This document shows positions 7,678-62,985 of a stretch of 64,000 bases of DNA, in pieces. The translations under genes and the position numbers were made by a program. Position 1 is the stretch's first letter. The number at the start of each line of letters is the position of its first letter. The notes beneath the pieces were generated by a model. That model was not told where the DNA came from. It saw only the letters and a list, made by a program, of their open reading frames with translations, and searched no databases. This DNA is from Diadema antillarum (lineage: Eukaryota). Where the stretch lies: positions 62,001 through 126,000 of the forward strand of contig NW_027271668.1 in the NCBI RefSeq assembly GCF_040938485.1. Direction: 5' to 3'.

Positions 7678-10600
7678 TTAACGGTGACTAAACTTGAGAA
7701 GGATTTCGTTGTCTGGCTTGGTTACAATTTGGAAGACTGGTCGGGCTCCCTTCACTAGGCTGACACTGAACCTGCGAAAGACTCGTGCTGCCGCGCTCCT
7801 TAGTTCGTCCATGGCGAATTGCTGCCCGATGCAGTTCCGAGATCCGGCCGAGAAGGGGACGAAAGCGAAGGGGTCTCGCTTCTCGACGTTGGCCCTCTCA
7901 AATCGTTCAGGTCTGAAGTCCATGTGGTCGTCTCCCCACACATCCGGGTTGTGGTGGGCCTGGTAGATGTTCACCACCACGCTGGTTCCCGCGGGAATAG
8001 TGCATCCATCCACCTTCAGCGGTTCCCTCAGCACGCGAGATGGCGGGATGTTCATGTACATGCGCAGCGATTCCCTGAGACACTGCGTTGTGTAAGTTAG
8101 TTTTTTGAGATCTTCGCTAGAAACGGAAAGAGAGAGAGAGAGAAAAAAAACCAACGGGATTCCCATCAATGACAGTATCTTACCAATTATCTCATTGACT
8201 CTCTCATACTAAGTCGTGCTGATATGTAAAGATCGTTCATATATATGACTTAAATTCAGAATGCGTCTTTCTTTGCTATTATTGTATTTTGAGAAATATT
8301 CAAGTGCTATACTCCTCTCCTCACAGTATCCTTTTAGTTTTATCTAATAACACACACCAAGTCAAGTACACGCCAATTTCAATTCGTTCATTTAATCACT
8401 GATTTTAGGAATACATTATTCCACAAACATACATACATTACACACACACATACATAGGCCTATATTATTATGTAATTCACGTAAACTTGGAAAAAGTGCA
8501 GTTTGTCATTGTTGTCTTTAAAGATCATGTGCTCAGTCATGCATGACATTTGTCAAAATAAGAAAGTATCAATGGAAAGAAGAAGTCTTCTTCCATAGCT
8601 CACAATCATGAAATAGTAGCATTCCAACGTTTGATTACCTTTTTTCTTTTTTTTCCTTTTTTTGGGGGGGGGGGGGGGTATACGCACAGTATGTGTGTCT
8701 GTGTGTGTGTGTGTGTGAGTGTGTGCGTGTGTAAATATGTGTGTTTATTCACATCTTTTTTGTTGGTAATTCTGCTGTACTAAGGCACATCGATTCATAT
8801 CATTGAATTTTGTTTAGAATGAAAAATGACGTGTGTGTGTCAGTTATTGCCTTGTTTTCTTTTACTTCCTAGTGCAGAAATGGTATACAGTATACTGAAG
8901 GGACTGTCCTTGTCACGATTTACAGTATCAACAAACTAAAGGGACGTCTTTTATTGAATGAAAGTGAATGAATAGTATTGGAAAAATCTTTAGGAACGTC
9001 TTTGTTGCTAACTCAGTCACAATCACGCAACACAATCTCTATATGAACCGGTCGAACATGGTTTTACTATCGAACGGTGTCGTCATCTCGTCCTGCGAAC
9101 AATGTGTCCATCTCCTCTTGAACTCGGGCCTGTTCCTCGGTATGTTGGGCCATGGTGTACAGAAACCACGTGAGGGCACTTCCGGTGGTGTCCGTGCCGC
9201 CAAAAATGAACGTGCTTACCTGTAATGTAGAGAAGACAATTTCTATGAAATCATAAATGACGAATCTTGTACAATGTTGTCAATGTACATTGTAAAATAA
9301 GGAACTAACGCAGAATCGCGATTAACACCTATCATTAAGATTCATAGCGCAGCTGGAATGGTATCTATCATAAAGGATCATATCATTCAGATTCATGAAA
9401 TTCTTCCGTCGAGATGTTTTCATTGCAACTGATTGACAAATTGCACTACATCGACGTAAATAAGCACTGAATTGATCAGTGTTTTAGTAGTAGCCAAGAC
9501 AAAAATCATGGGCGTGCATACTCGAGCAGGATTCGAACCTACGACAACCGAGTTTCCGCCCGACAGCAAGTGTTGGTTCTGATCCTTATAGCATGCAGCG
9601 GGTACTGCGTAATTATTCAAATTCATGGAATTCTTCCGTCGAGATGTTTTCAATTCATTTTATGAATCATATTTCATATCATATTTCTTCATCTATATCA
9701 TGAAATAAACATTACCGAGAATATCTTTACAAAATAGCATTTCTAATATTTCTAAGAAAAACTGATCTGTCACCAGAGCCTGATTTAGGCTCAATGGGTT
9801 TGAAAGTTTGTACTTGAACATCTTTGAATACAGGTTTAATCTGAATATCGGGTAATTTGAAAAGCTATTGAAAAACAAAGAACACAACTAACTTAGCTGG
9901 AAAGTACCTCATCACGTATTTCCTTCTCACTCAGTCCGTTGCCATTCGAATCTTTTGCTAGCAGCAATGTATCCAGAAAATCCATCGCTCTCTTCTCCGG
10001 CTTCATAAAAAGAGAACAAAAATGAATACAATGGAAAATACTAACTTTTATGGCCAACACTTTATTTGCTTGTAGCTAGATACGGCAAACTGAAATGGAA
10101 CACTGTAAACATTCAAGGAGAGTAATCATAAATATGCGGAGGGGGGGGGGGGGATATTCTGTTACAATTGATGGGATCAGCACCGCTGTGTGCTTGTAAG
10201 GTGTCTGTAAACCGTTTATGCATTTCTCGTAAAACTCGTCTTTATTCACTGTGTTATTGTTCCCGTGTTTGTCAATCCAATGTGGACTCAGATTGAACTT
10301 TGAGCAAATATATAAAATACACAAATTGAAGGGGCCGCAAACGGTGGTGGGGGACAGCCCATAATGCCCCCTCCCTCTCGACCACGCACCCCCCCCCCCC
10401 ACACACACACATTTTGCAATTGGAACAAAGTTGAAATAAGAAAAAAAATCATAAGAAATCCTATGAACTCTCAAGGGATATTTCCAGAGCCTCTTTCAGT
10501 CGAGGCGGGGGGGTCATCCCATGAGCTCGATACCCACGAGTCATACAGTCAAAAGGGGGGAGGGGGCAGCCCACGAGCTCCATACACTAAGCAAAAATGA

Positions 10601-40913: not shown

Positions 40914-43900
40914 CTAGCGGTGACTAAACTTGAGAAGGATTTCGTTGTCTGGCTTGGTTACAATCTGAAAGACGGGGCGGGCTCCCTTCACTACGCTGAC
41001 GCTAAACCTGCGAAAAATCCGTGCCGCCGCGCTCCGCATTTCGTCCATGGCGAATTGCTGCCCGATGCAGTTGCGAGCTCCGGCCGAGAAGGGGAGGAAG
41101 GCGAAAGGGTCTCGCTTGTCGACGTTTGCCCTCTCGAAGCGTTCAGGTTTGAAATCCCTGTGGTCGTCCCCCCAGACATCCGGGTTGTGATGGAGCTGGT
41201 AGTTGTTCACCTGCACGTCGGTTCCCGCGGGAATAGTGAGTCCATTTATTTTTAGCGGTTCCTTCAGCACACGACCTGGTGGGACGTTTAAGAATAGGCG
41301 CATCGATTCCCTGAGACATTGCGTGGTGTAGGTCAGTTTTTTTAGATCTTCGCTGAAAATAAAAACAAAACACGATCCCCATCAATGACGGTATCTTACC
41401 AGTTATCTAATCATATTTATACAATGTCATGGCGATCTGCAAAGATCATTCATAATTATTACTTGAATTCCGAAAGCGTCAATTCATTGCTATTATTGTA
41501 TTTTGGGGAGCAGTTGGCCAGGTCGTGTGGGACAAAACCCCGTCCGTTTCACGTATAACATTATTTCATAATTAATCATGTATGTGTTGATGATATGGAA
41601 TCTTTGTGATGATGAACCTCATCATTATGTTTAATAGCATCTACATGCAATTTCAGTTCAAATTTACTCACTGATATCAACATGTATACATTATCATGCG
41701 CATACACATGCACACACACACACACACACACATTACAATTATATACATGTGTGTGTGCCTATGTGTGTGTGTGTGTGTGAGAGAGAGAGAGTATGCGTGC
41801 TTATTCACATTTTTATAGTTGGTAATTCTGCTGTACTATTTTTATTTCATTGAATTTTGTTTAAAATGAAATTCGTGTCAGCTATTGCCATGTTATAATC
41901 CTTTATTTTCAAGTGTGGAAATGCTATATACTAAAGGGACTATCTTTGTCACAATGTACAGCAATACCAAACTAAAGTGTTGTTTTTTATTGATTTGTTG
42001 TGGTTTTTTTTTCAACAAATCTTGATGGACGGGTTTTTTGCCAACTCTGTCACAATCGCGCAACACAATCTGTATGTGAATCCGTCGAACTTACTATCGA
42101 ACGCTGTCGTCATCTCGTCCTGCGAACAGTGTGTCGACCTCCTCCTGAACTCGGGCCTGTTCTTCGGAATGCTGGGCCATGATGTACAGAAACCACGTGA
42201 GGGAGCTTCCAGTGGTGTCCGTGCCGGCGAAAATGAACGTATTTACCTGTAATGTCATCAAAACGAAAGGCAAACCCATGGCTACTTATTTCAAGACGAA
42301 CCTTTTTCAATATTTTAGAATATAGGCCCTACATTGTATAATCAAGAACCAACTCATAATCGTGATTAATATCTATCGTCTATCATCATTATTCCCGACT
42401 TTCCCAGTTTCCCACACTCTTTGTAGTTGTAAGCTTTCACCCCCTCCCCCCTTATTTTCCCCCTTTCTCTCAGAGGTATTATACAAGCATAGTCTTTTGA
42501 GTGGGTACCTCCACTGTTTTTCGCAGAGAGTAAAAAATATAGAGTGTATGTTCTTTTTTTTTAATGTACTGATCATGTAGACATGAACATGTTGTTATCC
42601 CTGTCTGACTATGTATATTCTAAACGACTCGCATGTCAAATCTATCATATTGTTTCTTGTACATTCTGTTGAAAAAAAAGTGAAAAATAAAATAAAGTTT
42701 GAATTTGGATTGATTCGTAGCGCTGGAATGGTAACTAGTATAAAGAATCATATTTCTTCATCTGTATATTATTGCCGTAAATATTTTCCACCAAAAAAGC
42801 ATTTATCCTATTCCTAAGAAAAACTGATCCGATATCAGACCCTCCTTCAGGCTTTTTGGGTTTGCAAGCTTGACTTTCACCTTTGAATAAAGATTTAATC
42901 TAAACATCTGGTGATTTGAAGCCAACGAAGAAACAAATAACATAAAAAGGAGCTGAAAAGTACCTCATCACGTATTTCCTTCTCACTCAGTCCATTGCCA
43001 TTCGAATCTCTTGCTAGCAGCAATGTATCCAGAAAATCCATCGCTCTCTTCTCAGGCTTCAGAAAAAGACAGAAATAAAAAAAAACAATGTAATAACTAA
43101 CTTGTATGGCTAACATTGTATTCGCTTCTACGGCAAACTGAAATGGTTATACATTTTATACATTCAAGAAGAGAAGCCATCGGTAGAGCCTATGCGTTTT
43201 TATGTTTGGATCCATGGGATCAGCACCAAACGCGCCAAAGTGCGCCTGTAAGACGACTGTAAGGATTTTCTTCTATGTATTTTTGGTAAAATTCTTAAAA
43301 TTATAAAAAAGAAAGGTTCATGACTTATACAGCCCACATATCCTAAAGCTCACGAGCTCCACGCTTACGGCAACAACAACAACAACCACAACAACAACAT
43401 CATCAACAACAACATCGTCATTAAAATGACCCACGAACTCGTCAATTATAGGCAAAGAAGCACGAGCTCGAGACTTGGCAAGAAAAGCCCACGACACCGA
43501 CACTGCGTATATTAAGATCTATTTATATACCTCATATAGATTCCTCTCATCAGATTGGTTAAAAGTGGAGTCATGAAAATAGCTGTGCCCCATTCTTGAT
43601 CAAAAACGTCATGACGTCAGATGCATGGCGCGTGTTTATGGGAAAAACGTTGGGTTAGGGTTTTTGGTTATGGTTAGGGTTAGGGTTAGGGTTAGGGTGG
43701 CCGCGCCCGGGGCATTGAATCAACTGTGCCCTGTAAATAGGTTTGGAGACACATAGATCGCTCATTCATTATGTACGCACCAATGATACGACCGCCGCGC
43801 CGCGCTGTCGATCAGCGTTGATTACGAGTGCTGCTTTTAGTCATTGTTTAATTCAGGTAACCTTTTAACCAATCAGATAAGAAGAATCTATATTTTCGTT

Positions 43901-46900
43901 ATATAAAACAAATAATGACAGCTTGATATTCGGGGCACAGTTAAAATTATGTAGGCCCTCGGTGATGTGAAAACCATAACTATGCCCTCAGCTTCGCTTC
44001 GGGCATAGTTATGGTTTTGACATCACCTTGGGCCCATAATTTTAACTGTGCCCCTCATAGTAGTCATTATTTGTATAATAATGTCCGTCTTGCGGGCATT
44101 TTTCGCCTAGTGTCGTGCTCGTGGGTCTGCCTGTACTAGTGTCGAGCTGGGCCTGATTTGCGTAGAGTCTAGCTCGTGGCCCTGTAAAGCTCGTGGGCCT
44201 ATTTCATTCGATGTCAAGCTTACTGGCGTCGTTCACTTTAGTTCTAGGACTGTATGATGTGTGGCCTGTATGACTCATAGGCGGTTTAACTCGTGGGATA
44301 TGCGCCCGAGGAGGGAGGGGCGGGTGTTAATATTGACCCTGATATAGTCCCCCACCTGCATTGGCTGTGCAAAAGTTTACCAACAAGACTAGTGATGAGT
44401 GGCATTGATCGAATTAATACATCATAATCTCTCAGGTTACCTCTTTCTCCAAGGCATATCTTTGTCGCCGCTCTGCGACAATCTTATCGTGTATGCCATG
44501 CATGTAAGAACAACCCTCTTTCCACTCTCTGTTCTTGGAGGACAGCCAGAAGAAAAAGCCGTAGAACATCAAAGGATGGTACACTCTGCGAGAAAACATT
44601 TTTATGGTGATGATATATAGGAAAAATGGGGGAATCCTGAGCATTAATTGCACGATTGATCCTTTTTTTTTTTGGTCTTTTTTAAAGTGAAGTTTCCTTG
44701 CATCTCTCCGCGGATTACTGGGCTATCATGATAATTATGATCTACAGCTTGTGGCAGTAGGAGAAGCAATGTAGGCCTACACGAGTCCATCGCATCGGTA
44801 CGGTTCGGTTGATCTGCATTACTAGTAGCATGAGTAATACAAAAATGTTTTTATGTTTATGTAACTTTAAAAATCAAGGTGGCTTGACATACGACTACAA
44901 AAATGTCAGAAATGTTATGTTATTAGCAGAAATAGATATCACTGATGTGCGCCATATTTTGCAGTTTGTAGGAAGTACTAACTTAAAGCATATGCGTGCT
45001 TTCGTTCAGTATGTCCAGAGGACAAGAAGATTCACTCTAACACAAAATTTTGTTAGATATTAAGTACTAGTATATGTTTGATTTAATCATTCTGCACATT
45101 GCACACAACCCAGATGTTTGCTTTATATCTTAGCGTTGTTTTGTTTTTTGATTAATGTAAATTTGTGATAGAATTCGAGTTGAATACTCCCGACTAGGAA
45201 TAATCACGAGCATCGGTCGAGCCCCTCTCGTGTATTGGAGTGGCCTAGGCAGGCGGACAGCCAATCACGGCCCCTCCTTGCTGAGAAGTCTGCTCAAGGT
45301 ACCGAGCCGGGCTGGCCAGAAAATACGATCGTCGATTGGGCAGCTCGAACCGAGGCCAGTGAGGGAGATTTCATTTTGATACAACGTATTATCTTGAATT
45401 ATTTATCAATAAAATGAAAATAATATAGGGTAAAATTTGAAAAATTTAAAGTGATTTTATGAATATTGATTTGGTGTAAATATTCCTTGAGGAATGATAA
45501 ACGCCAAATAAATTCAAATAACAACAACAACAACATGCCCTTGTGAACGTCTTAACATGAATTTTCCAAGATTCCGATATCAATTTGACAGAAAATAAAT
45601 GATTACTGCTTGGAGCAGGAGAACATTTATGTAAGGAGCAATTCGTCCGGATGTATTCATGCTTTGTGCAATATTGAAAGGAAGTCATACTGTAAAACTT
45701 GAACACAGTCTACAAAAGAATCTTCAGCGAATGAAGGACCCAGACTTCATCAGAAGAAAAAGGGGTAGTAGTAGTAGTAGTAGTACAGGTGGTGGTGATG
45801 GTAGTAGTTGGTAGAAGTGCAGAAGAAGAAGAAAAAGAGGAATAAGAAGAAAGAAAAATCACCTGTAGGCGCAGATATTCGTCAGCTTCTCCAAGACCTC
45901 CACTTCACGTGACTCCTTTTCCTGGCAATTTGATTGGTGGGAAAATGCGCAGCGGAGTATGACGTCAAGTGAAAGTAGTGACATGGTTTCATGTGTTTTG
46001 ACCGGTTCCCCTCGGTCAGCAGCAACGTGAAGCTTGTCAATCAGGACATCCAAAGCCTCAATTAAAGAAACAATTCAGGCAAAGATAGTTGTGAACGAGG
46101 ACCCTCTTAGATTTTCTTTAAGAAATTGACAAACAAAAAAATAACTTACAAAAATGCGTAAAGACAAACAAGTAAACCAATAAAAAAAAATACCAGAGAG
46201 ATACATTGTCAGAATTCTAAGGAGCATGCTAACGTAAAAGTGTGTTAATTCTAAAGTGTTTGAAAGAATGAAAAAGGTAAAGTTCCACAGAGGAACCAGA
46301 TGTAGAGCAATTTGCTTAGTCTTACTGGTATACACCTCACAAGGGGTTGATGAATGCTTGTTTCTGATGGTTTAAAGATAATAAAAAGTTTTGGTACCTC
46401 AAAAGTTCCCCTGAATTTCCGTGTTTCATGTTAAAGTACCTCTCATATTATAACTAACACTGTGAGACTTACTCGCCCCAAAGTGCTCTTATTTCTTAGT
46501 AATCATGCAACTAACTGCGACCAGCAGCCCCATACGCATAGCGTAATGGGGCTTCACATTGTAGCATTCAGGATTATGACAGATTTAGTATGGCGGGTAA
46601 ATATCAACTTAAAATCCTAAAAATTCTTCAATTTGAAGACTTACCAATTAAGTTGAAATATTGAAAACAGGCTTCGGGCAACGTTTGGTTCTGCCAATAG
46701 TCCCTTTCTGTTCGAATTGATGACTGAATGTGACTCGGTCGAGAGGACCTTGGGAGAGCTACATACACTGATTACTACGGCCAGCGCATGCGCACACATC
46801 ACATGCGAACAAATTTCAAATCCATGAACGAATAAGATATTTGTGTGCGCATGCCCTGGCCGTCAATTTAGTGTAGCTCTCCCAAGGTCCTCTCGATCGA

Positions 46901-49900
46901 GTCACATTCAGTCATCAATTCGAACAGAAAGGGACTAGCGACTATTGGCAAAACCAAACGTTGCCCAAAGCCTGTTATCAATACTTCAACTTAACTGGTA
47001 AGTCTTCAAATTGAAGAAATTTTTGGATTTTAAGTTGATATTTACCCGCAATACTAAATCTGTCATGATTCTAAATGCTACAATGCGAAGCCCCATTTAG
47101 CTATGCGTATAGGGCTGCTGGTGTTAGCTATGCGTATGGGGCCGCTGCACGCTGCTGGTCGCAGTTATCATGCAATAATGGTTTCGTACAATACGTGTAC
47201 TACCTCGCTGCCGTACGGCGGCGGCTCTGGTACGAAACCATTATTGCATGATTACTAAGACATGAGAGCACTTTGGGGCGAGTAAGTCCCACAGTGTTAG
47301 TTATATGAAAGGTACTTTAACCTGAAACACAAACTAAGACAAGGAAATTCAGGGAAACTTTTGAGGTACCAAAACTTTGTATTATCTTTAAGTTGCCGGC
47401 CTAAATTTAACAATGGGGAGTTTTCGCTACAACACGGGAAGACCGAGAATACGCGGAAGCAATCACCTGTGACAGTCCCCGCACTATAAAGGACTCCAGT
47501 CCCCATATCTAAGCAGTTTCACTTTCCTGTGAGGACGGAGCTGTGGGGACAAGAATCTGATCACTGATTGGCTGACTGGCTGGCTGGCTCACTCCAGCCC
47601 AGCATCGGGACCGAACACTATATTTTCGAATACCGTACTCGTTTTCCACGGGACGGGGCGTTTCTCGGATTTGATCATGCGCAGAGGCAAATTCTGCACA
47701 CGGCACTCTCAAATACCGGCTAGGTCGTGCTTGCAAAAACTCCCTATATTGGCCCCCGCGCGCGCAGCACAGCTTCATAACATGCAAGCATCCAAGCGGT
47801 CCGCTTCATAGCATCCTAAAGTACCCGGATGCGGACCCGGACGTAACACTTGTGTACTCTTAACGCGCTGCGCTTGGCCGTATCTAGCGCGCGCGTCCAC
47901 CTAATCAGCGCAGCGGAAGGTACGTGCACAATCGCTGTACCCTACCCTACTAGGTGTCAGTACTAGCACATAATTAAGATCGTCGCCGTAACAACGCTTA
48001 TAGCGTGCACATGTGTGATATCATGGAATCTATAGTGGCAATGCAAACGAAAAAAACAAACAAACATAGGCGTACGTGACCTTTTAAAAATATAACTTCG
48101 GTGAATCTAATCTGCAAACGTCAGTACATGTACTGTGGAAGGGGGCGGGTGCACAGAGATGTTGAACTTAACAACTCAATATTTTCTTGGCTCAAAGTCA
48201 CATAATATATGTTCGCCATTCCATGTTTACGGAAGAGGAAATTTGATTTTGAACTTAGAACATTATGCAACTCCTACGCATGTATGTTTTCACGTAAAAT
48301 AAGGAATAACTAACAACTGTAACAAGATAACTTTCAAGTCATTATTCAATTCAATTCAATTCAATTCAATCATCATCTTCAATGAAGCATTTGGAACAGA
48401 GTATATCTATGCTCTGGAATATTACCTAGAGCCTCTAGAATTTCAAGAGAAGAAATGGCAGTCTTTACAATGCTAAGTATTTTTTTTTTTGCGAATTGTA
48501 CTTCAATTAATAGTCTTTTTCGGCATGAAGTGACATGTTAATTATGGCAATAATAAGAAAAATTGTTGAGCAAACTGCTGAAAGGACAAGTTCACCTTCA
48601 TAGACATGTGGATTGAGTGAATGCGGCATTAGTAGAACACATCAGCGAAGGCTGGGGGCGAATCGGAAAATCCCTTCACTTACGAATTTTTGAAGTGTCT
48701 GCGCAGTCACTGCTGGGTGAAAAGACTACTACAGCTTGTGATGTCACATGATATATACAAAGATATAACGACAGTAAAAAGAAAATTTCACATGTTTTCA
48801 CTTTTCTCGCATAATAATAGAGCACTTGACTTGCCTATTTTAGAAGGCAGGGGGGAATTATACTCCCCTAATTGTATCGTTAGAGAGTCGAGGGAATGTG
48901 TACTTTTTACCGAAAATTAAATTCTCTAAATATTTTTCTCTTGACGTTGTACACAATGACATCATAAACTGTAGTAGTCTTCTCATCGAGCAGTGATTGT
49001 GCAGAAGTTTCAAAAAATCATAACTTTTGACAGGATTGTCTGATTTCATTTTCTAAAACTTTCACTGATATGTTCTACTGATACTGCTGCATTCTCTCAA
49101 TCCTTATGTGTATGAAGGTGCACAGTTCCTTTAAATACCCACCTCATTCATAACCACCAGGTATTGTTTCAAGACCTGAAAGTGAAATGATGGCGTGATG
49201 AGCGTCCGATGACGCTTCCAAATAGCGCCCTCTATTATAGCCAGTCCCTCGGTCCAGTCCTTGAAAACCTGATATAATTGAGACTAATTCAGAGAAAGAA
49301 AAAAAAAACAAAGAGAGAAATATCAATGAAAGTATAATACTATAAACATTATAACAAAAACAACGGTGTTAATGAAAAAAATTATCACAGTAACGATAAA
49401 AACTCTACTAGTATCTGTTAGAATCATTCACATAACGGCTTCCTTATTAGAGCCTGTAAATCTCAAGAATAAGTTGATGAACTATGAAACGTAGAAAAAC
49501 GACTAAAAAATGCAAACAGGGGTTTGTCAGAATAAATTCATAGTCTGGTCTAGTACGTGTGTGTGTGTGCATATACATATAAACAGGGAGAGAAGAGAGG
49601 GTGTGTGTTCGGGGGACTTACCAAAATCTTGTGATGGCATCATATCAAATCGTTTAGCATACCAACCGACTGTTACAATTTCGGTTGTCATTTAAAAAAA
49701 AAAAAAAAAAAAAAACCCTCACAACGTGCAGAAAAGTTAAAAAGCCCCTATACGTCTCCTTGGGAGCACAATGTAATGGGATTCTGTTACGTTAACGTTA
49801 TGGAGTCCATGAAAGCTAATCTGTAGTAATTGGGGCTTCAAACGAAGTTGTGAGATCAACTAAAAGATAAATTGTAACTACATTCACTTCATCATTCGTT

Positions 49901-50019
49901 AAAGTTAATGACCTAATTGCCTCAAACAGACAAAAAAAAACAACTTACATTTTCTTAAGCGTAAGTTTGAAGACATGACGGTAAAGTCAACATCTAATGA
50001 ATTGTTATACATTTGATTC

Positions 50020-50055
<36 letters not shown>

Positions 50056-50734
50056 TGAACACTGTTGAATACTGTAATTACTATATTTTTTCACGCTTAA
50101 ACCTGACATTAAGATGTCACAACACAAACAAATCGACGCAAACGCACACGCATACACACACACACACATCCAAACCTCTACTTTAATGACTTACCCTCCC
50201 CTTCCCGCACATGCCAAACTCTTTTTGTTTTAAGTAATTAAAGATCCCATATTTCTTCCAGAGTGGTAAAGTTTTCTAGCTCTGACTATTGTAAAAACCC
50301 CATGCAAACCCATACGACATAACAAAAACATCAGAAAAAATCTATACCACTCATTGATTTTGATAAGTTTGTTTTATGCAGAGTCACGATGTTAAAACCT
50401 ACTTTGTTATTTTCTCAATATGTATATTCTTTGTTGGAATTACCTCATGAGGACAAGAGGGATGGTTGAGCATTACTAGCGGTTTCCATCCCATCCAGAA
50501 CACCAGAAGTCTCCGGTACTTGGTCACTGCTTCTTGCTCCCACTTAAAACCCGGCTCCATAAACCCTGGATCGAAGATGTTGCCATAGAGCCAGTGAGGC
50601 TTGGGCCCGGGAAGATGTCGTCGGATATACACTAGACGACGAAAAGTAGCGACCAGTGACAAGAGAAACTGGACAATCTTGAAACCAAAGAAGGATAAAA
50701 CAACAGTTCCCAAAATGGTTGTAGTGAGCGACAT
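40914..50734 (-). CDS. Cytochrome P450, CYP4 clan, copy D (7 exons; exon 1 shortened; predicted 484 aa)
   Basis: Exons 50734-50444 (predicted new donor GAG|GTAATT, phase 0), 49283-49143, 46056-45863, 44585-44441, 43056-42964, 42246-42095, 41352-40914. Exons 2-7 are intact (VNTFIFAGTDTT, ESMR, PERF, PFSAGARNCIG). An extra in-frame ATG lies 11 codons upstream (50767). Functional status is uncertain because helix B is missing. Confidence 0.8.
43320..44310. mobile_element. Foldback element of intron 4 (copy D ortholog of 10515-10960), split by an insertion
   Basis: Left arm about 43320-43505 (cccacgaactcg / cacgagctcgagacttggcaa) and right arm about 44080-44310 (cctagtgtcgtgctcgtggg). Confidence 0.6.
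43508..44079. mobile_element. Crypton-like non-autonomous element with a long terminal hairpin and (TTAGGG)4
   Basis: Inverted pair atatagattc.tct.atc.gattggttaaaa, a hairpin with arms of about 55 bp centred on cagcttcgcttcgg (about 43990), and four perfect TTAGGG at 43674-43697. Sits in the foldback spacer that is short in B. Confidence 0.55.
46376..47387. mobile_element. 1-kb near-perfect palindromic Kolobok-like element (intron 2 of D)
   Basis: TTAA|AGATAATAAAAAGTTTTGGTACCTC ... GAGGTACCAAAACTTTGTATTATCT|TTAA. Arms mirror for more than 400 bp around a loop of about 45 nt near 46800-46840. Confidence 0.85.
47169..47250. mobile_element. 82-bp mini-MITE inserted in one arm of the palindrome
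   Basis: catgcaataatggtttcgtac...gtacgaaaccattattgcatg, absent from the mirror arm. Confidence 0.7.
47415..47745. mobile_element. MITE with GGGAGTTTT(C/T)GC termini (Harbinger-like)
   Basis: gggagttttcgc / gcaaaaactccc ends with a GC-rich interior. Confidence 0.5.
48583..49130. mobile_element. Kolobok-like MITE inserted 12 nt into intron 2 of copy D
   Basis: Imperfect TIRs of about 70 bp, aggacaagttcaccttcatagacatgtggattgagtgaatgc / aggaactgtgcaccttcatacacataaggattgagagaatgc. Flanks TGAA / TTAA; the site is empty in B, C and E. Confidence 0.8.
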
Positions 50735-50908
50735 TATGGCGTCTACAGCGCTTACACAAGTGCTCATTTTGCTTGTTCAGCTGTGCGTGCAATATGTGTG
50801 TGTACACCGGTATGTGTAATTCTACTCTGTATGCTATTAAACGTTAATGTGCATGTTTATGTGTTTTCCCTTTCTAGCCCGCACCCTCTGAAGATGTTAA
50901 GGCATTGT

Positions 50909-50924
50909 TCAAGTTCAAAGTGCC
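50909..50924 (+). promoter_or_regulatory. Proximal DR1-like site upstream of copy D
   Basis: TCAAGTTCAAAGTGCC, identical to C and E. Confidence 0.5.
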
Positions 50925-51836
50925 TTTTCGTGTTTGGTTTAGCCCAAGCAGGAAGTATCCTTGTTGGCCTGGGAGTGTGGTATTCCGCTTAGAGGTCGTG
51001 CCCTGCATTTCGAAAAAAAAAAATCGCACATCAGCTACAAATATCAGCATGATTATGTTCGCTGTATATTTTTTTGACATGATCGAGTGTCATTCGAATG
51101 TTTAATCCCTGTTAAACATAACCAAAACAGCAAACATATCCACCTGTTCAACAAGAATATCTTGTTATATTTGTTATTATGTTTATGCACAAAGAAAAGC
51201 GAATTATATTACGATGTACAAATACAGACGTCTCTAGAATGCAGAACAGCATTGCAGACGGACATTTCATTTTTTTTCATAACTATCAATTGGGATGTCA
51301 TTGTATTAATTAGCTTTGACAGTTTTTATTAGCTTTAATTTGTCCGTAATTGACTGAAGAAAAAAAAATCTTATTTCATCCCTCAAGTAATGTGCAAAAT
51401 TCTGTCACAACAGCAACAGCGAAATGTTAACAGATTCCATTCGATGTCTCTTATGTTGTCATGAATTTCCACCAGGCCCCGTTAGAAGTGGAAAATGTCG
51501 GTAACATGAGTCTAGTTGATGCTTGACATCAACAGTATGCCCATGCAATTAACCATTTGGCAGAATTCAGTACGAGGTTCAGAGGTTACAAAGATACAAT
51601 GAAATATAAGAGGAAAATAAAGTCAAAGTGTCTTTATACTTTCTATATACGCAGAGTGTATAATCGCTACAATCTGCTGCGACAAAGAGGTTACATCGGA
51701 GGTCGCCTGCAGGAATTTATCTCAATTTGCAGCCGTTGGGGGAATCTTTCGAGACAGATTGAAGAGAGGGTGGGGGAGGAGTGTCAGGTATAGTCTTTAA
51801 ATCCTAGTCTTGTTCGTTTTCATGATAAAGTTTTAA

Positions 51837-55159: not shown

Positions 55160-58100
55160 CTAACGGTGACTAAACTTGAGAAGGATTTCGTTCTCTGGCT
55201 TGGTTACAGCCTGAAAGACGGGGCGGGCTCCTTTCACTAGGCTGACGCTGAACCTGCGGAAGATTCGTGCCGCAGCGCTCCGCAATTCGTCCATGGCGAA
55301 TTGCTGCCCGATGCAGTTGCGAGCTCCGGCCGAGAAGGGGACAAAAGCGAAGGGGTCTCTCTTCTCGACGTTGGCCCTCTCAAATCGTTCAGGTTTGAAG
55401 TCCATGTGGTCGTCTCCCCACACGTCCGGGTTGTGGTGGACCTGGTAGAGGTTCACCATCACGTTGGTTCCCGCGGGAATGGTGAATCCGTTCACCTTCA
55501 GCGGTTCCCTCAGCACGCGAGATGGCGGGATGTTTAGGTACAAGCGCACCGATTCCCTGAGACACTGCGTGGTGTAAGTTAGTTTTTTTAGATCTTCGCT
55601 GGGAACGAAAACAAAACATGATTCCCATAAATGACGGTATATGATTATCTCATTCACTCTAGTACAAAGTAATACCGATCTGTAATGATAATTCATATCA
55701 CTGGAATTCCGGATGGGTCTTCCTTTCCTACTATTGCATTTCGGGAAGCAGTAGGCCAGCACGACTGGTATAAAATCCGGACCGTTTTACGTATAACATC
55801 TATACCATGCATTGCCATGTATACGTTGATAAGTGTACTGCCAAGAACTGTATAGAGTCTTTGTGATAATGACCCTCATCATAATGTGTTTGGGTAGCAT
55901 CCATTGTTTGCCATTGAGAAGACTGGATGTAGATAGAGCTAGAGAGGATCAGCCAAGATAAGCTATTCATAAAGAACTCACAGTATCCTCTTTGTTCATC
56001 AAAATAGTATGACGATGGACTAGTCGAACATAATCTTACTATCGAACACTGTCGTCATCTCGTCCTGCGAACAGTGTGTCCACCTCATCTTGAACTCGAG
56101 CCTGTTCCTCGGGATGCTGGGCTATGATGTACAGAAACCAAGTGAGGGCACTTCCGGTGGTGTCCGTGCCGGCGAAAATGAACGTGTTTACCTGTCATGA
56201 TATCAGAACGGAAAGCAGACCATGGCTAATAAATGATAAATCTATCACTTGTATGCTTATCAATCGTGTCAATATACACTGTAAAATCTGCAACTGTATA
56301 ACGCAGAATCACGATTAGCACCTAAGACTCATAGCGCAGGCATAGTAACTGTGAAGGCACATATTTTTCATCTCTATCACGAACTATATTACCGAGCTAT
56401 CTTTTACAAATTAGCATGTCTGCTATTCCTAAGAGTAATGCTCTGTTACCGAAGTCTTAATTAGGTGTTGGGTTTGCAAGCTTGAATTTTCAGGTGATTT
56501 TCTTTGTTCCGAAAGTTACGTTTATTCCGAAGGTTCGGTATTCCGAAACACACAAATTCCATGTACATACATGTTGTAGATGCTCGTTATTCAAAGAAAA
56601 AAGAAATGAAATGGGGATCATTAATCCACACATTAGTGGCGTTGTTCCGGAGGTTACAATCTGTTATTTCGAAAATACGTTAATCAAAAAATTAAATCAG
56701 GTCCGTTATTCCGAAGGTTTATTAATCTGAAAATGGAAAAAAAAAAGGTTCGTACAAGAATCTTTGCTATTACAAACTTTATTTCGAGTTTGGATCAACA
56801 AACTTTCGGAATAACATACCTTCCGAATAACAAAGTGTAACCCTATTTTTATCATCAAATACGAATTCAATTTGAATATCTAGTGAATTAAAAGCCAACA
56901 AAGAAACAAATAGCACAACAAAAGTGCTAGAAAGTACCTCATCACGTATTTCCTTCTCACTTAGTCCGTTGCCATCCGAATCTTTTGCTAGCAGCAATGT
57001 GTCCAGAAAATCCATCGCTTTCTTCTCCGGCTTCATAAACAGAGATAAACGATAAACATCATACAATGGACAATATTTGTGGCTATCATTTTATCAGCTT
57101 ACAACTAGAAACGGCAAACTTAAATGGTGCATTGTATACATTCAATGAAAGTGGCCATCAGTATGCGTTTGTATTTTCTGTTTGGATTCCTAGGATCAGC
57201 GTAAAACTCGTAAAACTCGTCTCTGTTGATCGGTTCTTTTCCCTAGGTCGTCAATCTAACGTGGGCCTTTGATAAGACCTTGAGCAAAATGTAAGATTAT
57301 GAAATAAGGGAGCGCAAAACGGGGTGAACAGCCCCAAGGACCTCCCCCCCCCCCCCCCACACACACACAGACACATTTGGCATTTAGAAAAAAAAAAGTC
57401 AAAATAATACCAAAAATCACAATAAAACCAGTGACTTCCCGAGGGTTCTGTCTGGGGGCCCCTATTCGTTAAGGGGGGGGGGGAGAGGGGGTGTCACCCC
57501 ACGATCTCTACACCCACGAGTCGTACAGTCCACGAGCTTGACATTGCAAAAAGGGTGTCGCATACACCCTGTAAATCATATAGCCTACAACCTCGACACT
57601 CTTCAAAAAGAAAAAAAAAGGGCCACAATCTCGACACTTTATAGGCAAATAAGCCCTCGAACATGACAGTATAAGGAAAATAATACATTCATGATCCCTC
57701 AGGTTACCTCTTTTTCGGTGGCGTATCTACGTCGGCGCCCAGCGACGATCTTATCATGTATGCCATGCATGTAAGAACAACTTTCTTCCCATTCTCTGTA
57801 TTTGGAGGACAGCCGGAAGATAAAGTCGTAGACCATCAAAGGATGGAGCATTCTGTTGAGGAAAATTTCAGGTGATTAAAAAAAAAAAGAGTGGGCGTAA
57901 TCGTTCCTGAAATTTTTTTACTTTAGATACTGTATTGATTTTTCTTTTTTTCTCTCTCTTTTTTTACGGAAGTTTCCTTCACATCCTTGTGGATTATTGA
58001 GCTGGTGTGATAATTGGGATCGACAGCCTGTGAGATTGGGAGAAACAATGTAAAATTACGAGTCCAGTGTTGCTATGTAACTCGGTTAATTTCTTCACTT

Positions 58101-60437
58101 CCGCCCCCAAGGCTTACTTCGTTCCATCTGACGACCGCGTTCGGTGCGGTTGGTCGCGTTACACAACCTTTCGTAGATTATATTTGCCCTAATATTCGAA
58201 CATTAAGTTGTGATCAATAACAATCCCGGTTTTTTTTTTCTTCCTCAGCACAACATCATTCCATAATATAGCAAATGCCGAGACTATGCGGGTTTTAGAA
58301 TAATGTCGAATCACCTGTATGTGCATATATTCGTTAGTTTCTCCAAGACCTCTACTTCACGTGCCTCCGTTTCCTGGCAATTTGATTGGTGGGAGAATGC
58401 GCAGCGGAGTATGACGTCAAGTGAAAGTAGTGACATGGTTTCATGTGTTTTGACCGATTCCCCTTCGTCTGCAGCGACGTGAAGTTTGTCAATCAGGACA
58501 TCCAATGCCTAGATTAAAGGTTTAATTCAGACAGAGACAGTTGTGAACAAGGAACACAAATTTTCTTTATTTGTAGTAGGGAATGGGGTTAAAAAATGAA
58601 TAAACAAAAACTTAGTCACCGAAAAACCATAAACACAAACAAGCAAGCCAATCAATGAACCGAATATTATAACAAGAGATACCAATTAGTCACAGAGGCA
58701 CATTGTCAGAATTCTAAAAAGGATTCAAAGGATGAAATGAATAAGTTCCAGAGAAACCGCATGCAGGGAAATTTAGTCTTATGCTATCGGCAGCTTTGTT
58801 TTGATTATTCAAGAATAGCAAATGAAAACAAAAAACAACAACACACCACATACATTCGGCAATATGTGCAATAATAAGTAGACCTAAGTCAAATTAGGCT
58901 CATCTAATGACAAAACATGTCCATGTATGTACACTGAATTTTCTGCATTCATAAAGTAGAAGTCTTAAATGATATTTCTTTTAAAGTGTGCTAAACTATA
59001 AGTTTCATCACTAATCCAGTCATATTTAAGTAGGAATTATCATTTTAAGAAAGGATTTTGAAGTTAAATGAAACTGCGTTAACACTCGGCAACTTTTTTG
59101 ACATCAGCATTTGCGATGATCATAATTGTGTTTCATTGATTTATCGAAAGAAGTTCATGTAATAGAGCTTTGAATTCTTCAGAAATACTCAGTGGGTGAA
59201 TTCCATTTTTCTTGGCCAATAGATTTCTTTAATGTATTTAAGTATACAGATGTCCTTTCTGAATGTGAGAATCTTTATGATCTAAATCACAATCCAAATC
59301 TGTAGAATTAAAGAAAATTCATACATAAAAGGCATGGAATTGAAGATCTTTCAACACTTTATGGTAATATTGTCTTCTTCTTATTATTATTATTATTATT
59401 ATTATAATTATTATCATTATTATTATTATCATTATCACTATCATTACATGTAGTTCTTCGAGAATGAAATAGAAGCAAACACGCACAAAAAAAAAACACA
59501 TCAGTGGTATGAATATCATATGAACACAGAATCCATGAGATATCAGGCTTATAAAATGTATTCTTCAAATCAGATAAAGTTTCAAAACTTAGTTACTCAT
59601 ACTATGTAAACAGCCATAAAACAATAGTTGCAGTAACCAGGTCATCAAATAAACTACGAAACTAACTTATCATTGAGTCTTTCGTTTTCCTTTGAATCAC
59701 AGAAGGCCGATTGAAAATAGAATTCGTAGTTTTCAATTTAAGTTCTTTCACTCACACACACACACACACACACACAAAATCGCCGCCATGACTTATCTTT
59801 GTAAAATTGCAATAACTTCAGTGAATCGTATCGGCAAAAGTTTTTTTTTTTTTCTTGGGGGGGGGGGGGAGGGGGAATCTCGACAGGAACTCAATATTTC
59901 TGTGCTCAAAGACAAGATATTCACGGTTCTAAATAATTGTTTTAGATGAGGAAGTAATCATACTTTGGAACTTACATTTCATAACTACATACATTATTTT
60001 TTCATTTCATATTTTCACGTAATGTCAAGGATATCATGCGTACTTTAAAGTCATTCTTTTTCGACGAAGCATGTGGAACAAAGAAAACATGTCACAGCTT
60101 TGAAAATAATGAAGCGCCTGTAGAATTTCACGAGAACAAATGACAATCTCTGCAATTCTATGCTTAATGCTAAATCAAGTTTTTACATGTTGTACTTCAA
60201 CTGGGGGATGACGCATGCAACGTGTTTATTGTGGAAATAAACTTTGAATGAAAAATAAATGGTTGAGCAGCTTGCTGGAGTCCACTCACCTCGTTCATGA
60301 CCACCAGGTATTGTTTCAAGACCTGAAAGTGAAATGATGGCGTAATAAGAGAGCGATGGCGCTTCCAAATATCGCCATCTATTATAGCCAGTCCCTCGGT
60401 CCAATCCTTGAAAACCTGATATCCGTCAGTCTGATGC

Positions 60438-60470
<33 letters not shown>

Positions 60471-62985
60471 AGTATTAGATTAATATTGATACATGAGTAC
60501 AATGATACAAATTTAGATATTCCAACAACAACGGCCCTCTAGTATGGCCAGTCCCTCGAGCTAATCCTTGAAAACCCGATCTATATAGAGTAATATCGAT
60601 AAGTAAAGTACATGTGAAATTGAGTAACAAATGAAAAAGACACATAATTGTATTAAAGTATATACATAGTATTATGCATAAAGTACAATTAACGATGGGA
60701 TTTCAAATGGAGGTCCCACTAAAAAGCAAAGCTTGTACGATAAGGGACCCTCAGATAATACATAAGACAGCGAATAATGAATTAACGAAGCTACAAACGG
60801 ATATGTAACAAAATCAAACGAACCGATGTTAACTGACATGAAATCAAATTGGGAAGGTAAAAAAGAAAAAAGAAAGAAAAAGAAACTACAGCATGTGCCA
60901 TCATGGACACAAGCAAACAGAATTTAATGATATAAGAGTAATGATAAAAACAACAACCTGGATTGAGTATATTGCAAAGAATTTTGTACATAATTATACG
61001 GGTAAGAATCAATGCAGAAGAACGGACATAGAAGAAGGAGAGAATAGACATAATGGTATATACGGTACAATAATACACTGTAAAAACATCGGTGTTAGAT
61101 TTAACACCACGGGTGTTAAATTTAACACCGGTCAAACTTCAATAAAGGACCACACCCACGGGTGTTGAAAATGCACTGTGATGGTGTTGAAAAGTGTTCA
61201 CCTGACACTTCGTGGTGTTAATTTGACACTGTACCTGGTGTTATTTTGACACCGTACTGGTGTTAATTAAAATATGACACCACATGGTGTTGATTTGATA
61301 TTTGTTGGAGTTAATATCAATAGTTTAACACCCGTCCAGCTTCAATAAGAGACCACACCAGCTGGTGTTACTGTGGTGTAAATTTATTTTCATATTTTTT
61401 CAAAAATCTAGTATTTTAATGTAAAATTCTTGATCGTCTTGTTTAAATTAAAAATCAACAAGAAGTGCAGTTACTAAGAAACTCTTCAAAAACAGTTTAA
61501 AATTTGGAAATGACACCAGGAGGTGTTGATTTAACACCATAAATGAGCACCGAAAATTTAACACCAGCTCGGTGTTCACTATTTAACACCGCGGGACTTT
61601 TTGCAGTGTAGGAATATTATCTGACAAGGACTTGTGTTTAACAGATTATTTTCTCTAATAGAAAAATGATTTATACATAACTGTTTGATGCTTTAATGAT
61701 GACTTGACTGAGATGACGAAACGAAACTAATTCGGTTGTATGTTGTAAGATCTCAATACAAACACTTTTTTAATTTGTTCTTAAAAGAGTTCAAAGTTTG
61801 AGCTCTTGTTATATTGTTGTGAGCTAAGTTCCAATACTACGGCCCATCGTAGATGAATGTGTTCTGAGCCAGCATTGCTCTAAAAAAAGGTAAATAGAAA
61901 TTATTCTATGTCCTTGTTCGATAATTGTGAATGGATTGATTTCTTCGAAACATTGTTTCAAATACATTTGGAAGATTATAATCATACATATTGTCCTAGA
62001 TTAAACAAATACAAATCTTTAATTGTCAATATTTTGTGTTAAAAAATAACGGGTCAGTATGAGGCAAAAATGCAGTATGGCATATGATACGGAGTGATTT
62101 CTTTTGTATTAGAAGTAATTTATCTAAGAGTGTTTGATGTATATTTCCCCCACTCGAGAATACCATAATTTAAATATGGCAATATTAGGGATGAATATAA
62201 TGTAAGCAGGGACGATAAAGGAAAAGAAAATTTAAGCTTATCAATTATATCAATGTTTCGTGAAATAATTTTGCATAATCGTAAATTATCAATATGACAT
62301 TTGGATATAGAAACAAATAAATGAATGAAAATGACATAAAAAGGCCCACACCTCCAGAAGCTTTTCTTCTACACGGACCGTTTTTCCAATAACACAATGA
62401 TTTTGTTCAAACAGCTTGACAAAGGTTATTAACTCTCTTGTTTTCTTTTTCAATTGCAAACATGAAAATCTCTAATATGGATTTGAAATTACCAATTTGA
62501 TGGAACTTATATGATAGTGGAAATACAGTTGAATTCAATTGAATTCAATATGGAGTAAACCTCGACAAGTTTACAGGTATATTGTAATCTTTGCGAAATC
62601 TAAGTCGAATGTTATCAAATAACTATCTTGTTCTTTTGGTTCAGTTATGAGTATCATTTGGACATACCTTTCTTCCGATGTTTGTAGCCAGTATAGGTTT
62701 AATGCTATCAGGGTGGTTGAGCATCACAATCGGTTTCCATCCCATCCAGAACACCAGAAGTCTCCGGTACTTGGTCACTGCTTCTTGCTCCCACTTAAAA
62801 CCTGGCTCCATAAACCCCGGGTCGCGGAAGTTGCCATAGAGCCAGTGTGGCTTGGGCCCGGGAAGATGTCGTCTGATGTACGCTAGACGGTGAAGAGTAG
62901 CGACCAGTGACAAGAGAAACTGGACAATCTTGAAACCAAAGATGGATAAAGCAACAGTCCCAAAAATGCTTGTAATAAGCGACAT
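55160..62985 (-). CDS. Cytochrome P450, CYP4 clan, copy E (7 exons, 493 aa)
   Basis: Exons 62985-62668, 60430-60290, 58508-58315, 57852-57708, 57030-56938, 56191-56040, 55598-55160; GT-AG, open frame. Motifs VNTFIFAGTDTT, ESVR, PERF, PFSAGARNCIG. Confidence 0.95.
56491..56850. mobile_element. MITE with ttattccgaagg subrepeats (intron 5 of E)
   Basis: Imperfect TIRs ggtgattttctttgttccgaaag / ctttcggaataacataccttccgaataacaaagtgtaacc. The site is empty in B and D. Confidence 0.6.
57490..57665. mobile_element. Left arm only of the intron-4 foldback element (copy E)
   Basis: acccacgagtcgtacagtccacgagcttgacattgcaa...ctcgacactttataggcaaa. The right arm is deleted. Confidence 0.55.
60532..60581 (-). 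pseudogene. Decayed partial duplicate of P450 exon 2 in intron 1 of copy E
   Basis: The minus strand reads R-V-F-K-D-stop-L-E-G-L-A-I-L-E-G versus QVFKDWTEGLAIIDG in the real exon 100 nt downstream (TGG changed to TAG). Confidence 0.75.
61076..61608. mobile_element. Non-autonomous EnSpm/CACTA element (intron 1 of E)
   Basis: TA|CACTGTAAAAA ... TTTTTGCAGTG|TA with many ggtgttaaatttaacacc subterminal repeats. Confidence 0.8.
61750..62315 (-). mobile_element. LINE (CR1/L2 group) ORF2 3' fragment (intron 1 of E)
   Basis: CKIISRNIDIIDKLK, LYSSLILPYLNYGILEWG, LLLIQKKSLRII, HTDPLF, SIHNYRTR, NTFIYDGP and SFKNKLKK across frames. Same type as 20226-21135. Confidence 0.85.

What the first reader, a model, noticed from the sequence alone, without database searches (positions are those of the whole stretch)
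50390..50480. Copy D lost its exon-1 donor in a deletion of about 440 bp and appears rescued by a new in-frame donor born in intron sequence
Seen: after ...MLNHP, D lacks the last 14 codons (DSIKPLLATNIGRK), the GT donor and about 400 nt of intron. It joins directly to sequence homologous to intron 1 of B near 15100. Fifteen nt later D has GAG|GTAATT where B has GAG-GAAATG (no GT). This donor is phase 0, so exon 1 (291 nt) joins exon 2 in frame: NHP-SCPHE-SQLYQ, 9 residues shorter overall, with five intron-derived residues. Exons 2-7 carry no disabling change. Established: the lost segment corresponds to helix B and the entry to the B-C loop (SRS1). Inference: either a compensatory splice-site gain yielding a P450 with a remodelled access channel, or a very young pseudogene. 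Either outcome is a rare snapshot of exonisation in a gene array.
Basis: partly seen in the sequence, partly recalled or inferred. Interest (0 to 1): 0.78.

Follow-up and report, generated by a model that had tools for sequence, protein, structure and literature searches.

The report
One-haplotype splice-donor deletion in P450
One of the two assembled chromosome copies of a sea-urchin P450 gene lacks 165 bases, including a splice signal, and the supposed rescuing splice signal already sits in the intron of the intact copy, so this is an ordinary young defective allele (or an assembly slip), not an evolutionary repair.

Summary
Copy D (minus strand, 50734-40914) goes from ...MLNHP straight into intron-derived SCPHE and then GAG|GTAATT. 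Exon 1 is 291 nt, the join to exon 2 is in frame, and exons 2-7 are intact.

The window comes from the Diadema antillarum assembly OU_Dant_1.0, which keeps both haplotypes. The second haplotig carries the same gene (D', XP_071476286.1, 493 aa) with the normal exon-1 end (DSIKPLLSTNIGRK) and the donor AAG|GTTTGT. The same GAG|GTAATT lies 138 nt further into its intron.

The event is therefore a 165-bp deletion (42 nt of exon plus 123 nt of intron), not about 440 bp. The rest of the gap is an old intron-length difference between D and B. The deletion is allele-specific, and the GT existed before it, so there was no compensatory gain.

Contigs from two read sets also show the undeleted form. The deletion appears only in this contig, so an assembly artefact remains possible (about 25%).

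NCBI already models the 484-aa product (XP_071505749.1). No RNA evidence could be obtained.

The lost segment is helix B plus strand beta1-5, and none of 58 CYP4 homologues lacks it.

Most likely this is a young null or hypomorphic allele. Interest is low.

The scan earlier reported a similar heterozygous deletion allele elsewhere in this genome (s1-224610).

The parts
50444..50734 (-). Exon 1 of copy D as it stands on this haplotig (291 nt, 97 codons). The intact allele has 318 nt.
   Evidence: identical to the N-terminus of NCBI protein P0156
50458..50459 (.). Deletion junction. 165 bp present in the other haplotig (L002 6277-6441) are absent here. Base 50459 (C) is shared by both sides as 1 nt of microhomology.
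   Evidence: X2 contig record 18 carries 164 extra letters plus the shared base at exactly this point
50444..50458 (-). Fifteen intron-derived bases read as SCPHE if the cryptic donor is used
   Evidence: the same 15 bases are intronic in D'
50438..50446 (-). Cryptic donor GAG|GTAATT, phase 0. It pre-exists in the intact allele's intron. The same 9-mer is the working intron-4 donor of copy B.
50397..50405 (-). Competing donor-like site AAA|GTAGGT, 41 nt further on. It is out of phase on this haplotig and would give a frameshift and an early stop in exon 2.
   Evidence: frame read directly from the sequence
49143..49283 (-). Exon 2 of D (141 nt), 100% identical to D'
45863..46056 (-). Exon 3 of D
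44441..44585 (-). Exon 4 of D
42964..43056 (-). Exon 5 of D
42095..42246 (-). Exon 6 of D (I-helix, FAGTDTT)
40914..41352 (-). Exon 7 of D (ExxR, PERF, heme-binding FSAGARNCIG, stop codon)
15494..15541 (-). Copy B: the 42 nt coding DSIKPLLATNIGRK plus its donor AAG|GTGTGT, the paralogous counterpart of what D lacks
14973..15089 (-). Copy B intron 1 segment homologous to D 50336-50450 (81% identity). It contains GAGGAAATG at 15085-15077.

Best explanation
Copy D is a working member of a tandem array of CYP4-clan P450 genes in Diadema antillarum. The window shows one haplotype's allele of it. On this haplotig, a single 165-bp deletion with 1 nt of microhomology removed the last 42 nt of exon 1, the donor AAG|GTTTGT and the first 123 nt of intron 1. 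The other haplotig of the same assembly, and contigs from two read sets, carry the undeleted gene.

The deletion placed an already existing intronic cryptic donor (GAG|GTAATT, normally 138 nt inside the intron) 15 nt after the break, by chance in phase 0. If the allele is transcribed, splicing can only use this site or another cryptic site, such as the out-of-phase AAA|GTAGGT at 50405-50397. The in-frame product would be a 484-aa P450 lacking helix B and strand beta1-5, a segment kept by every CYP4 homologue examined.

I therefore read it as a young null or strongly hypomorphic allele that is heterozygous or segregating. It is not a rescued gene.

Shown here: the deletion's size, its allele-specificity, the earlier existence of the GT, and the identity of the rest of the protein. 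Inferred: loss of function and what the RNA does.
For: Organism and assembly:
- NCBI names the proteins as Diadema antillarum, on contigs of 309,762 and 820,763 bp.
- The assembly paper states that both haplotypes are retained (1.75 Gb against a 703 Mb haploid size, 2.52% heterozygosity) (PMC13511894).

The two contigs are allelic:
- Window 55520->35227 is colinear with L002 at 94-99.9% identity, and E'-D' lie in the same order as E-D.
- D' exon 1 is 99.6% and exon 2 is 100% identical to D.
- The proteins are identical except V35A and the junction.

The deletion and the GT:
- D' has the intact exon end and donor, then the same CTCTTGTCCTCATGAGGTAATT.
- The exact deletion is 165 bp.
- An X2 contig carries 164 extra letters exactly at 50459, with flanks identical to the window. 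An X1 contig runs on unlike the window beyond 50459. X1 matches the L002 haplotype at all 13 haplotype SNPs listed for it.

Selection and chance:
- D-branch dN/dS is about 0.18, the lowest of the four copies.
- None of 58 CYP4 homologues lacks the segment.
- In the AlphaFold model of D', helix 92-100 and strand 104-106 have pLDDT 92. In D the same stretch is coil with pLDDT 60.
- In-phase cryptic donors arise in 8-20% of simulated donor-removing deletions.
Against: - The deletion junction itself was not seen in any listed read-set contig. It is known only from this assembled contig.
- Within 125 bp of the junction the window also has two private 1-nt run-length differences (50335, 50402) where X1, X2 and L002 all agree. 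This could point to local assembly or polishing error.
- No RNA data were obtained, so donor use is untested.
- NCBI's pipeline, which used RNA-seq, models exactly the in-frame join (P0156 equals my model). That could reflect real junction reads.
- AlphaFold keeps the rest of the P450 fold at high confidence (mean pLDDT 89.7), so misfolding is an inference.
Confidence: 0.65

Rival explanations
1. Assembly or polishing artefact. The true sequence of this haplotype is undeleted, and the 165-bp gap and the nearby 1-nt run-length differences were introduced when the contig was built. The assembly combined hifiasm contigs, Nanopore patches from other individuals and Racon polishing with short reads.
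For: - The X2 contig has the window's SNP alleles around the junction (50316, 50322, 50380; 0 other letters over 50222-50522) but the undeleted state.
- X2 also has the L002 state at the 1-nt indels 50335 and 50402. These lie within 31 nt of window-type SNPs, so this combination is a real read path.
- No listed contig bridges the junction as the window has it.
- The assembly paper describes patching with reads of other individuals and Racon polishing.
Against: - A clean 165-bp loss with 1-nt microhomology is not a typical HiFi or polishing error.
- The window haplotype also has private SNPs (50221, 50758, 50766, 50775, 51201, 51234), so it is a genuinely distinct haplotype.
- Haplotigs here differ by many real indels, from 12 bp and 520 bp up to 2.7 kb.
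- Logan contigs drop minor variants, so absence from them is weak evidence.
- Another follow-up in this genome reported a similar heterozygous deletion (s1-224610, not checked by me).
Confidence: 0.25
2. The deletion allele is spliced at the cryptic donor and yields a stable heme-binding P450 with a remodelled B/B-C region, kept in the population as a functional variant.
For: - The join is in phase 0 and the frame is open.
- The 9-mer GAG|GTAATT is identical to copy B's working intron-4 donor and matches the consensus as well as D's own donor (7 of 9 each).
- NCBI models this product.
- AlphaFold keeps the global fold.
Against: - The GT predates the deletion, so nothing was selected to compensate.
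- Helix B and beta1-5 are present in all 58 homologues, from sponges to vertebrates.
- Model confidence at the junction drops from 92 to 60.
- The allele was not seen in two other read sets.
- An out-of-phase competitor donor lies 41 nt downstream.
- AlphaFold does not measure stability.
Confidence: 0.05
3. A fixed, very young pseudogene: the species as a whole has lost functional D.
For: Seen from the window alone, D lacks its donor while the rest is intact.
Against: An intact allele exists in the same assembly and in contigs of two read sets.
Confidence: 0.02

Closest known systems
Cryptic 5' splice-site activation after loss of the authentic donor. The classic cases are in human disease genes such as beta-globin IVS1 (own knowledge); reviewed in PMC4329672 (found).
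   Same: The authentic donor is gone. A GT that already existed nearby in the wild-type intron is the only candidate replacement. Whether the product stays in frame depends on chance spacing.
   Different: Here the donor was removed by a 165-bp deletion rather than a point mutation. Use of the cryptic site has not been shown in RNA.
Segregating splice-defective null alleles in P450 gene clusters, such as human CYP3A5*3, CYP2C19*2 and CYP2D6*4 (own knowledge, not checked here)
   Same: One member of a tandem P450 array carries a polymorphic splice lesion, while intact alleles coexist in the population.
   Different: Those alleles give frameshifted or truncated products and are common. This one has an in-frame option and has so far been seen on a single assembled haplotig.
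CYP4 family fatty-acid omega-hydroxylases (CYP4B1, PDB 5T6Q/6C93). NCBI names the gene 'ultra-long-chain fatty acid omega-hydroxylase-like'.
   Same: - Pfam p450 match.
- Best structural matches are CYP4B1, TM 0.87, 33% identity.
- The Cys ligand loop, ExxR and PERF motifs are present.
   Different: - The I-helix reads FAGTDTT where the family consensus has FEGHDTT, so the heme-linking Glu is absent.
- The substrate is unknown.
- The deleted allele lacks helix B.
Heterozygous exon-cutting deletion in the srGAP gene of the same genome (scan finding s1-224610)
   Same: It is in the same assembly and of the same kind: one haplotig carries a deletion of a few hundred bases that damages an exon, and the other is intact.
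   Different: It affects a different gene and has no in-frame cryptic splice option. I did not re-test it.

Membership tests
Cytochrome P450 (Pfam PF00067), CYP4 clan | Pfam p450 profile match | tested here: met
   Exon 7 scores E 8e-40. Exon 1 is below the cut-off alone because it is short. Full proteins carry PF00067.
Cytochrome P450 (Pfam PF00067), CYP4 clan | Cys-ligand loop FxxGxRxCxG, ExxR in helix K, PERF motif | tested here: met
   FSAGARNCIG, ESMR and PERF are present in the D translation. These columns are invariant across 59 homologues.
Cytochrome P450 (Pfam PF00067), CYP4 clan | Fold closest to solved CYP4 structures | tested here: met
   For the D' model, the top three PDB matches are CYP4B1 with TM 0.86-0.87.
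Cytochrome P450 (Pfam PF00067), CYP4 clan | I-helix glutamate that forms the covalent heme ester link typical of most CYP4 enzymes (consensus FEGHDTT) | tested here: not met
   D reads FAGTDTT, against the consensus. This affects all copies and is not the subject of this finding.
Cytochrome P450 (Pfam PF00067), CYP4 clan | Complete core topology including helix B and strand beta1-5 between beta1-2 and helix B' | tested here: not met
   This refers to the window allele only. In D the stretch 90-98 is coil with pLDDT 60, whereas D' has helix 92-100 and strand 104-106. 0 of 58 homologues lack the segment. The intact allele D' meets the feature.
Cryptic donor activation allele | Authentic donor removed | tested here: met
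Cryptic donor activation allele | Replacement GT pre-exists in the wild-type allele | tested here: met
   GAG|GTAATT lies at L002 6454-6462, 138 nt past the true donor.
Cryptic donor activation allele | Cryptic site used in mature RNA | not testable with these tools
   No RNA holder was listed. The single reads call laid only contigs. An NCBI model exists, but its evidence is not visible.
Compensatory splice-site gain (new donor born after the lesion) | The GT is derived and occurs only together with the deletion | tested here: not met
   The GT is present on the undeleted D'. No difference is listed at 50442-50443 in the undeleted X1 and X2 contigs that cover it.
Fixed unitary pseudogene | Disabling lesion on all alleles and relaxed constraint | tested here: not met
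   An intact allele exists. D-branch dN/dS is about 0.18.

The most novel reading that the evidence does not exclude
The deletion allele is real, is spliced at the pre-existing cryptic donor, and yields a folded heme-binding P450 without helix B and beta1-5. This would be a natural test of how much of the B region the P450 fold can lose, segregating beside the normal allele.
Probability: 0.05. Interest if true: 0.6.

Novelty: new member of a known kind. Interest (0 to 1): 0.17.

Why it matters
As it stands, this is a routine structural polymorphism, or an assembly slip, in a very heterozygous genome (2.52% heterozygosity, both haplotypes assembled). Its practical value is cautionary in two ways.

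- In assemblies that keep both haplotypes, a gene that looks 'caught in the act' may simply be one allele. The other haplotig should be checked before an evolutionary story is built.
- NCBI currently lists the 484-aa product as an ordinary protein (XP_071505749.1) beside the 493-aa allele. That inflates and distorts the P450 catalogue of this conservation-relevant species.

Only if the allele proved real, expressed and heme-binding would it be of interest to P450 structural biology.

Tried and rejected
- **Word-based protein search with D exon 1.** It came back blank because of the length window, so it says nothing.
- **RNA evidence.** The run search listed no RNA holder, and the single reads call returned contigs only. 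Donor use stays untested. The exon-only coverage in X12 (organism C) could be RNA or cross-species conservation, and I did not use it.
- **Polarity of GT versus GA from paralogues.** Only B's intron is alignable to D's. A, C and E gave nothing even with 7-nt words. The question was settled from the allele instead.
- **PDB sequence search with B exon 1.** It gave only marginal E-values (0.025). I used it only to see that NHPDSIKPLLA aligns with the TDPDVIRTVLV stretch of CYP3A5.
- **Paper search for P450 cases of in-frame cryptic donors.** It returned only general reviews.
- **Deletion mediated by a repeat or transposon.** Rejected: the break has only 1 nt of microhomology.
- **L001/L002 as a paralogous duplicate rather than the allele.** Rejected because of 20 kb of colinearity at 94-99.9% identity and a protein identical but for one residue.
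- **Depths.** I did not try to decide heterozygosity from them, because contig depths cannot carry that.
- **N run at 23368-23517.** It was left untouched.
- **Joined exon models.** My own models were built only inside scripts and were not sent to any search or folding tool.

Full report
**What is in the window.** The window holds five tandem P450 genes on the minus strand. Their exon 1 copies start at 3263 (A, cut by the window start), 15817 (B), 31497 (C), 50734 (D) and 62985 (E). I built seven-exon models for B-E from conserved AG/GT borders.
- B, C and E have exons of 318/141/194/145/93/152/439 nt and encode 493 aa.
- D has a 291-nt exon 1 and encodes 484 aa.
- All other donors and acceptors of D are canonical and the frame is open.
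- Pfam assigns the exons to p450.
- The AlphaFold model of the intact protein matches CYP4B1 best (TM 0.87).

**Checking the observation.** D reads ...MLNHP, then SCPHE, then GTAATT. B, C and E read ...MLNHPDSIKP(L/I)LATNIG(R/I)K followed by GT.
- D 50336-50450 aligns to B 14973-15089 at 81% identity, about 410 nt inside B's intron 1. The two introns are colinear further down.
- B has GAGGAAATG at 15085-15077 where D has GAGGTAATT at 50446-50438.

**Where the window comes from.** A search with D's last exon gave a full-length representative. Using that as the query returned the annotated proteins of this array.
- NCBI names them 'ultra-long-chain fatty acid omega-hydroxylase-like [Diadema antillarum]', on contigs of 309,762 and 820,763 bp.
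- P0156 (XP_071505749.1, 484 aa) is identical to my D model. NCBI's pipeline therefore already joins 50444 to 49283.
- P0152 equals my C model.
- The assembly paper (PMC13511894) states that OU_Dant_1.0 retains both haplotypes: 1.75 Gb against about 703 Mb haploid, 2.52% heterozygosity and 84% duplicated BUSCOs.
- The same paper says the assembly was patched with Nanopore reads of other individuals and polished with Racon.

**The decisive comparison.** P0156's 90% cluster has one other member, P0266 (XP_071476286.1, 493 aa), on the 820,763-bp contig. I fetched that DNA as L001 and L002.
- It carries E' and D' in the same order and spacing as E and D.
- It is colinear with window 55520->35227 at 94-99.9% identity, interrupted by large intron indels of 2.7 kb and 520 bp. 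It is the allelic haplotig.
- D' exon 1 is 99.6% and exon 2 is 100% identical to D.
- The two proteins are identical except V35A and the junction.
- In D' the exon continues ...NHP-DSIKPLLSTNIGRK with the donor AAG|GTTTGT. After 123 nt of intron come exactly the letters that follow the break in D, including TCATGAGGTAATTCC.
- Exact matching puts the missing piece at L002 6277-6441. That is 165 bp: 42 nt of exon plus 123 nt of intron, with one shared C at the break.
- The cryptic GAG|GT lies 138 nt downstream of the true donor in D'.

Two conclusions follow. The mutational event is 165 bp, not about 440 bp, and the rest of the gap to B is an older intron-length difference. The GT was already in the intron of the undeleted allele, so it is not a compensatory gain.

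**Read sets.** No RNA holder was listed. I laid contigs of four runs on 48900-51300.
- X2 (organism A, a different sample and study) has a 466-nt contig made of 50522..50459, then 164 letters not in the window, then 50459..50222. Both flanks are identical to the window.
- X1 has a 528-nt contig that fits 50179-50459 and then runs on for 215 letters unlike the window.
- Compared with L002, X1 carries the L002 allele at all 13 haplotype SNPs listed for it, and the 12-nt and 6-nt insertions.
- X2 carries the window's SNP alleles near the junction (50316, 50322, 50380) but the undeleted state. It also has the L002 state at the 1-nt run-length differences 50335 and 50402.
- No difference is listed at the GT (50443-50442) in either undeleted contig.
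The deletion appears only in the window contig.
- Contigs drop minor variants, so this does not prove the deleted allele is absent from those samples. It does keep an assembly or polishing artefact in play. I put that at about 25%.

**Selection.** Pairwise dN/dS among the four copies is 0.20-0.33, with dS 0.22-0.33.
- Changes unique to D are 26.5 synonymous and 16.5 non-synonymous, giving dN/dS of about 0.18, the lowest of the four.
- With the intact allele in hand, this simply shows that D has been a constrained gene. The deletion is far younger than the D branch.
- Site patterns conflict (CD 25, DE 15, BD 9). This indicates exchange among copies.

**Is the in-frame donor remarkable?** GAG|GTAATT matches the 9-position consensus at 7 positions. 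D's true donor AAG|GTTTGT also matches at 7. The same 9-mer is B's working intron-4 donor.
- I simulated every deletion in D' that starts in the last 90 nt of exon 1 and removes the donor.
- 8% of all such deletions, and 20% of those of 100-300 bp, leave a stop-free, in-phase GT of at least this quality.
- On the window haplotig a second donor-like site, AAA|GTAGGT at 50405-50397, is out of phase and would lead to an early stop in exon 2.

**The protein.** The lost residues align with the CYP3A5 stretch DPDVIRTVLV.
- In the AlphaFold model of D' they form helix 92-100 and strand 104-106. These lie between beta1-2 (84-89) and the short helix 108-113. In the standard P450 topology these are helix B and beta1-5, ahead of B' (the naming is established P450 nomenclature, from my own knowledge).
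- Block confidence there is 92.
- In the model of the 484-aa product the same place is coil, and block confidence is 60. The rest of the fold is kept (mean pLDDT 89.7).
- In an alignment of 58 homologues from sea urchins, starfish, molluscs, annelids, a sponge, Trichoplax, lancelets, tunicates and vertebrates, none lacks this segment. 57 have no gap and one has a single-residue gap.
- AlphaFold does not measure stability, so loss of function is an inference. It is a well-founded one.

**Verdict.** The sequence facts are confirmed. The event is smaller than described and is specific to one allele. The 'new donor' is old.
- The best reading (0.65) is a young null or hypomorphic deletion allele, heterozygous or segregating, with a chance in-frame cryptic donor.
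- The main rival (0.25) is an artefact of this contig.
- A functional, remodelled P450 remains possible but unlikely (0.05).
- A fixed pseudogene is excluded.

The kind of event is well known from cryptic donor activation (review PMC4329672) and from splice-defective P450 alleles in humans (own knowledge). Another follow-up reported a like case in this same assembly (s1-224610; not re-tested).

**Limits.**
- I could not see RNA.
- I did not send my own joined exon models to any search or folding tool. I used the public records P0156 and P0266 by id.
- The N run at 23368-23517 was left alone.

Noticed in passing
L002:6319-6456 (intron 1 of the intact allele D'): The 138 nt between the true donor and the cryptic donor form 46 stop-free codons in frame with exon 1. 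The two donors match the consensus equally well (7 of 9). The intact allele could therefore in principle make a +46-aa isoform. This may well be chance: B has a stop after 8 codons.
   Followed up: partly
window 7678-15817 (copy B) and 55160-62985 (copy E): NCBI's model for B (P0159, 446 aa) skips the intact 141-nt exon 2. Its model for E (P0160, 400 aa) replaces exons 3-4 with other sequence. The E' model (P0161) starts 8.5 kb upstream with a foreign first exon. Canonical 493-aa models are open in the DNA. These are annotation quirks or real alternative splicing.
   Followed up: partly
window 42211-42228 (D), with the same place in B, C and E: The I-helix reads FAGTDTT (FGGTDTT in B), where the CYP4 consensus of 59 homologues is FEGHDTT. 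The heme-linking glutamate is missing in the whole array.
   Followed up: partly
window 48956-49132 (intron 2 of D, just past exon 2), with an inverted partner at 48581-48746: This is a very high-copy repeat. Summed contig depth is 10^5 or more in runs of organisms A and C, about 10^3 in the small run of organism B, against about 5-20 for the flanks, with many joints and loose ends. It is probably a MITE-like element shared across related species.
   Followed up: no
window 46372-47391 (intron 2 of D): This is a large, nearly palindromic block. 46520-47122 is its own inverted repeat at 85% identity, flanked by an inverted pair at 46372-46510 and 47244-47391.
   Followed up: no
window 47512 and 48311-48326, versus L002 9927-12633 and 8599-9119: The other haplotig has a 2.7-kb and a 520-bp insertion in D's intron 2 relative to the window. 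By contrast, 47512-43705 is 99.95% identical with no gaps. Haplotype divergence along one gene is very uneven.
   Followed up: no
window 50335, 50402, 50777, 51269: These are small indels where the window stands alone against X1, X2 and L002: one extra T, one missing A, a missing 6-mer and a missing T. They are either private variants or small errors of this contig. They matter for judging the 165-bp gap.
   Followed up: partly
window 40914-50734 versus copies B, C and E: Ancestry is mosaic. Coding sites group D with C (25 sites), with E (15) or with B (9). Intron 1 is colinear only with B's. The 5' flank (50459-51323) aligns only with C's. This suggests gene conversion or unequal exchange within the array.
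   Followed up: partly
L001:1-6435 (820,763-bp contig, upstream of E'): The gene upstream of E' on the other haplotig matches exons 3-7 of B-E at only 80-94% DNA identity, so it is a further copy. It is probably the 493-aa P0153 (85-87% protein identity to B-E), but I did not check this. The array extends beyond the window.
   Followed up: no
window 23368-23517: A run of 150 N lies in intron 6 of copy C.
   Followed up: no
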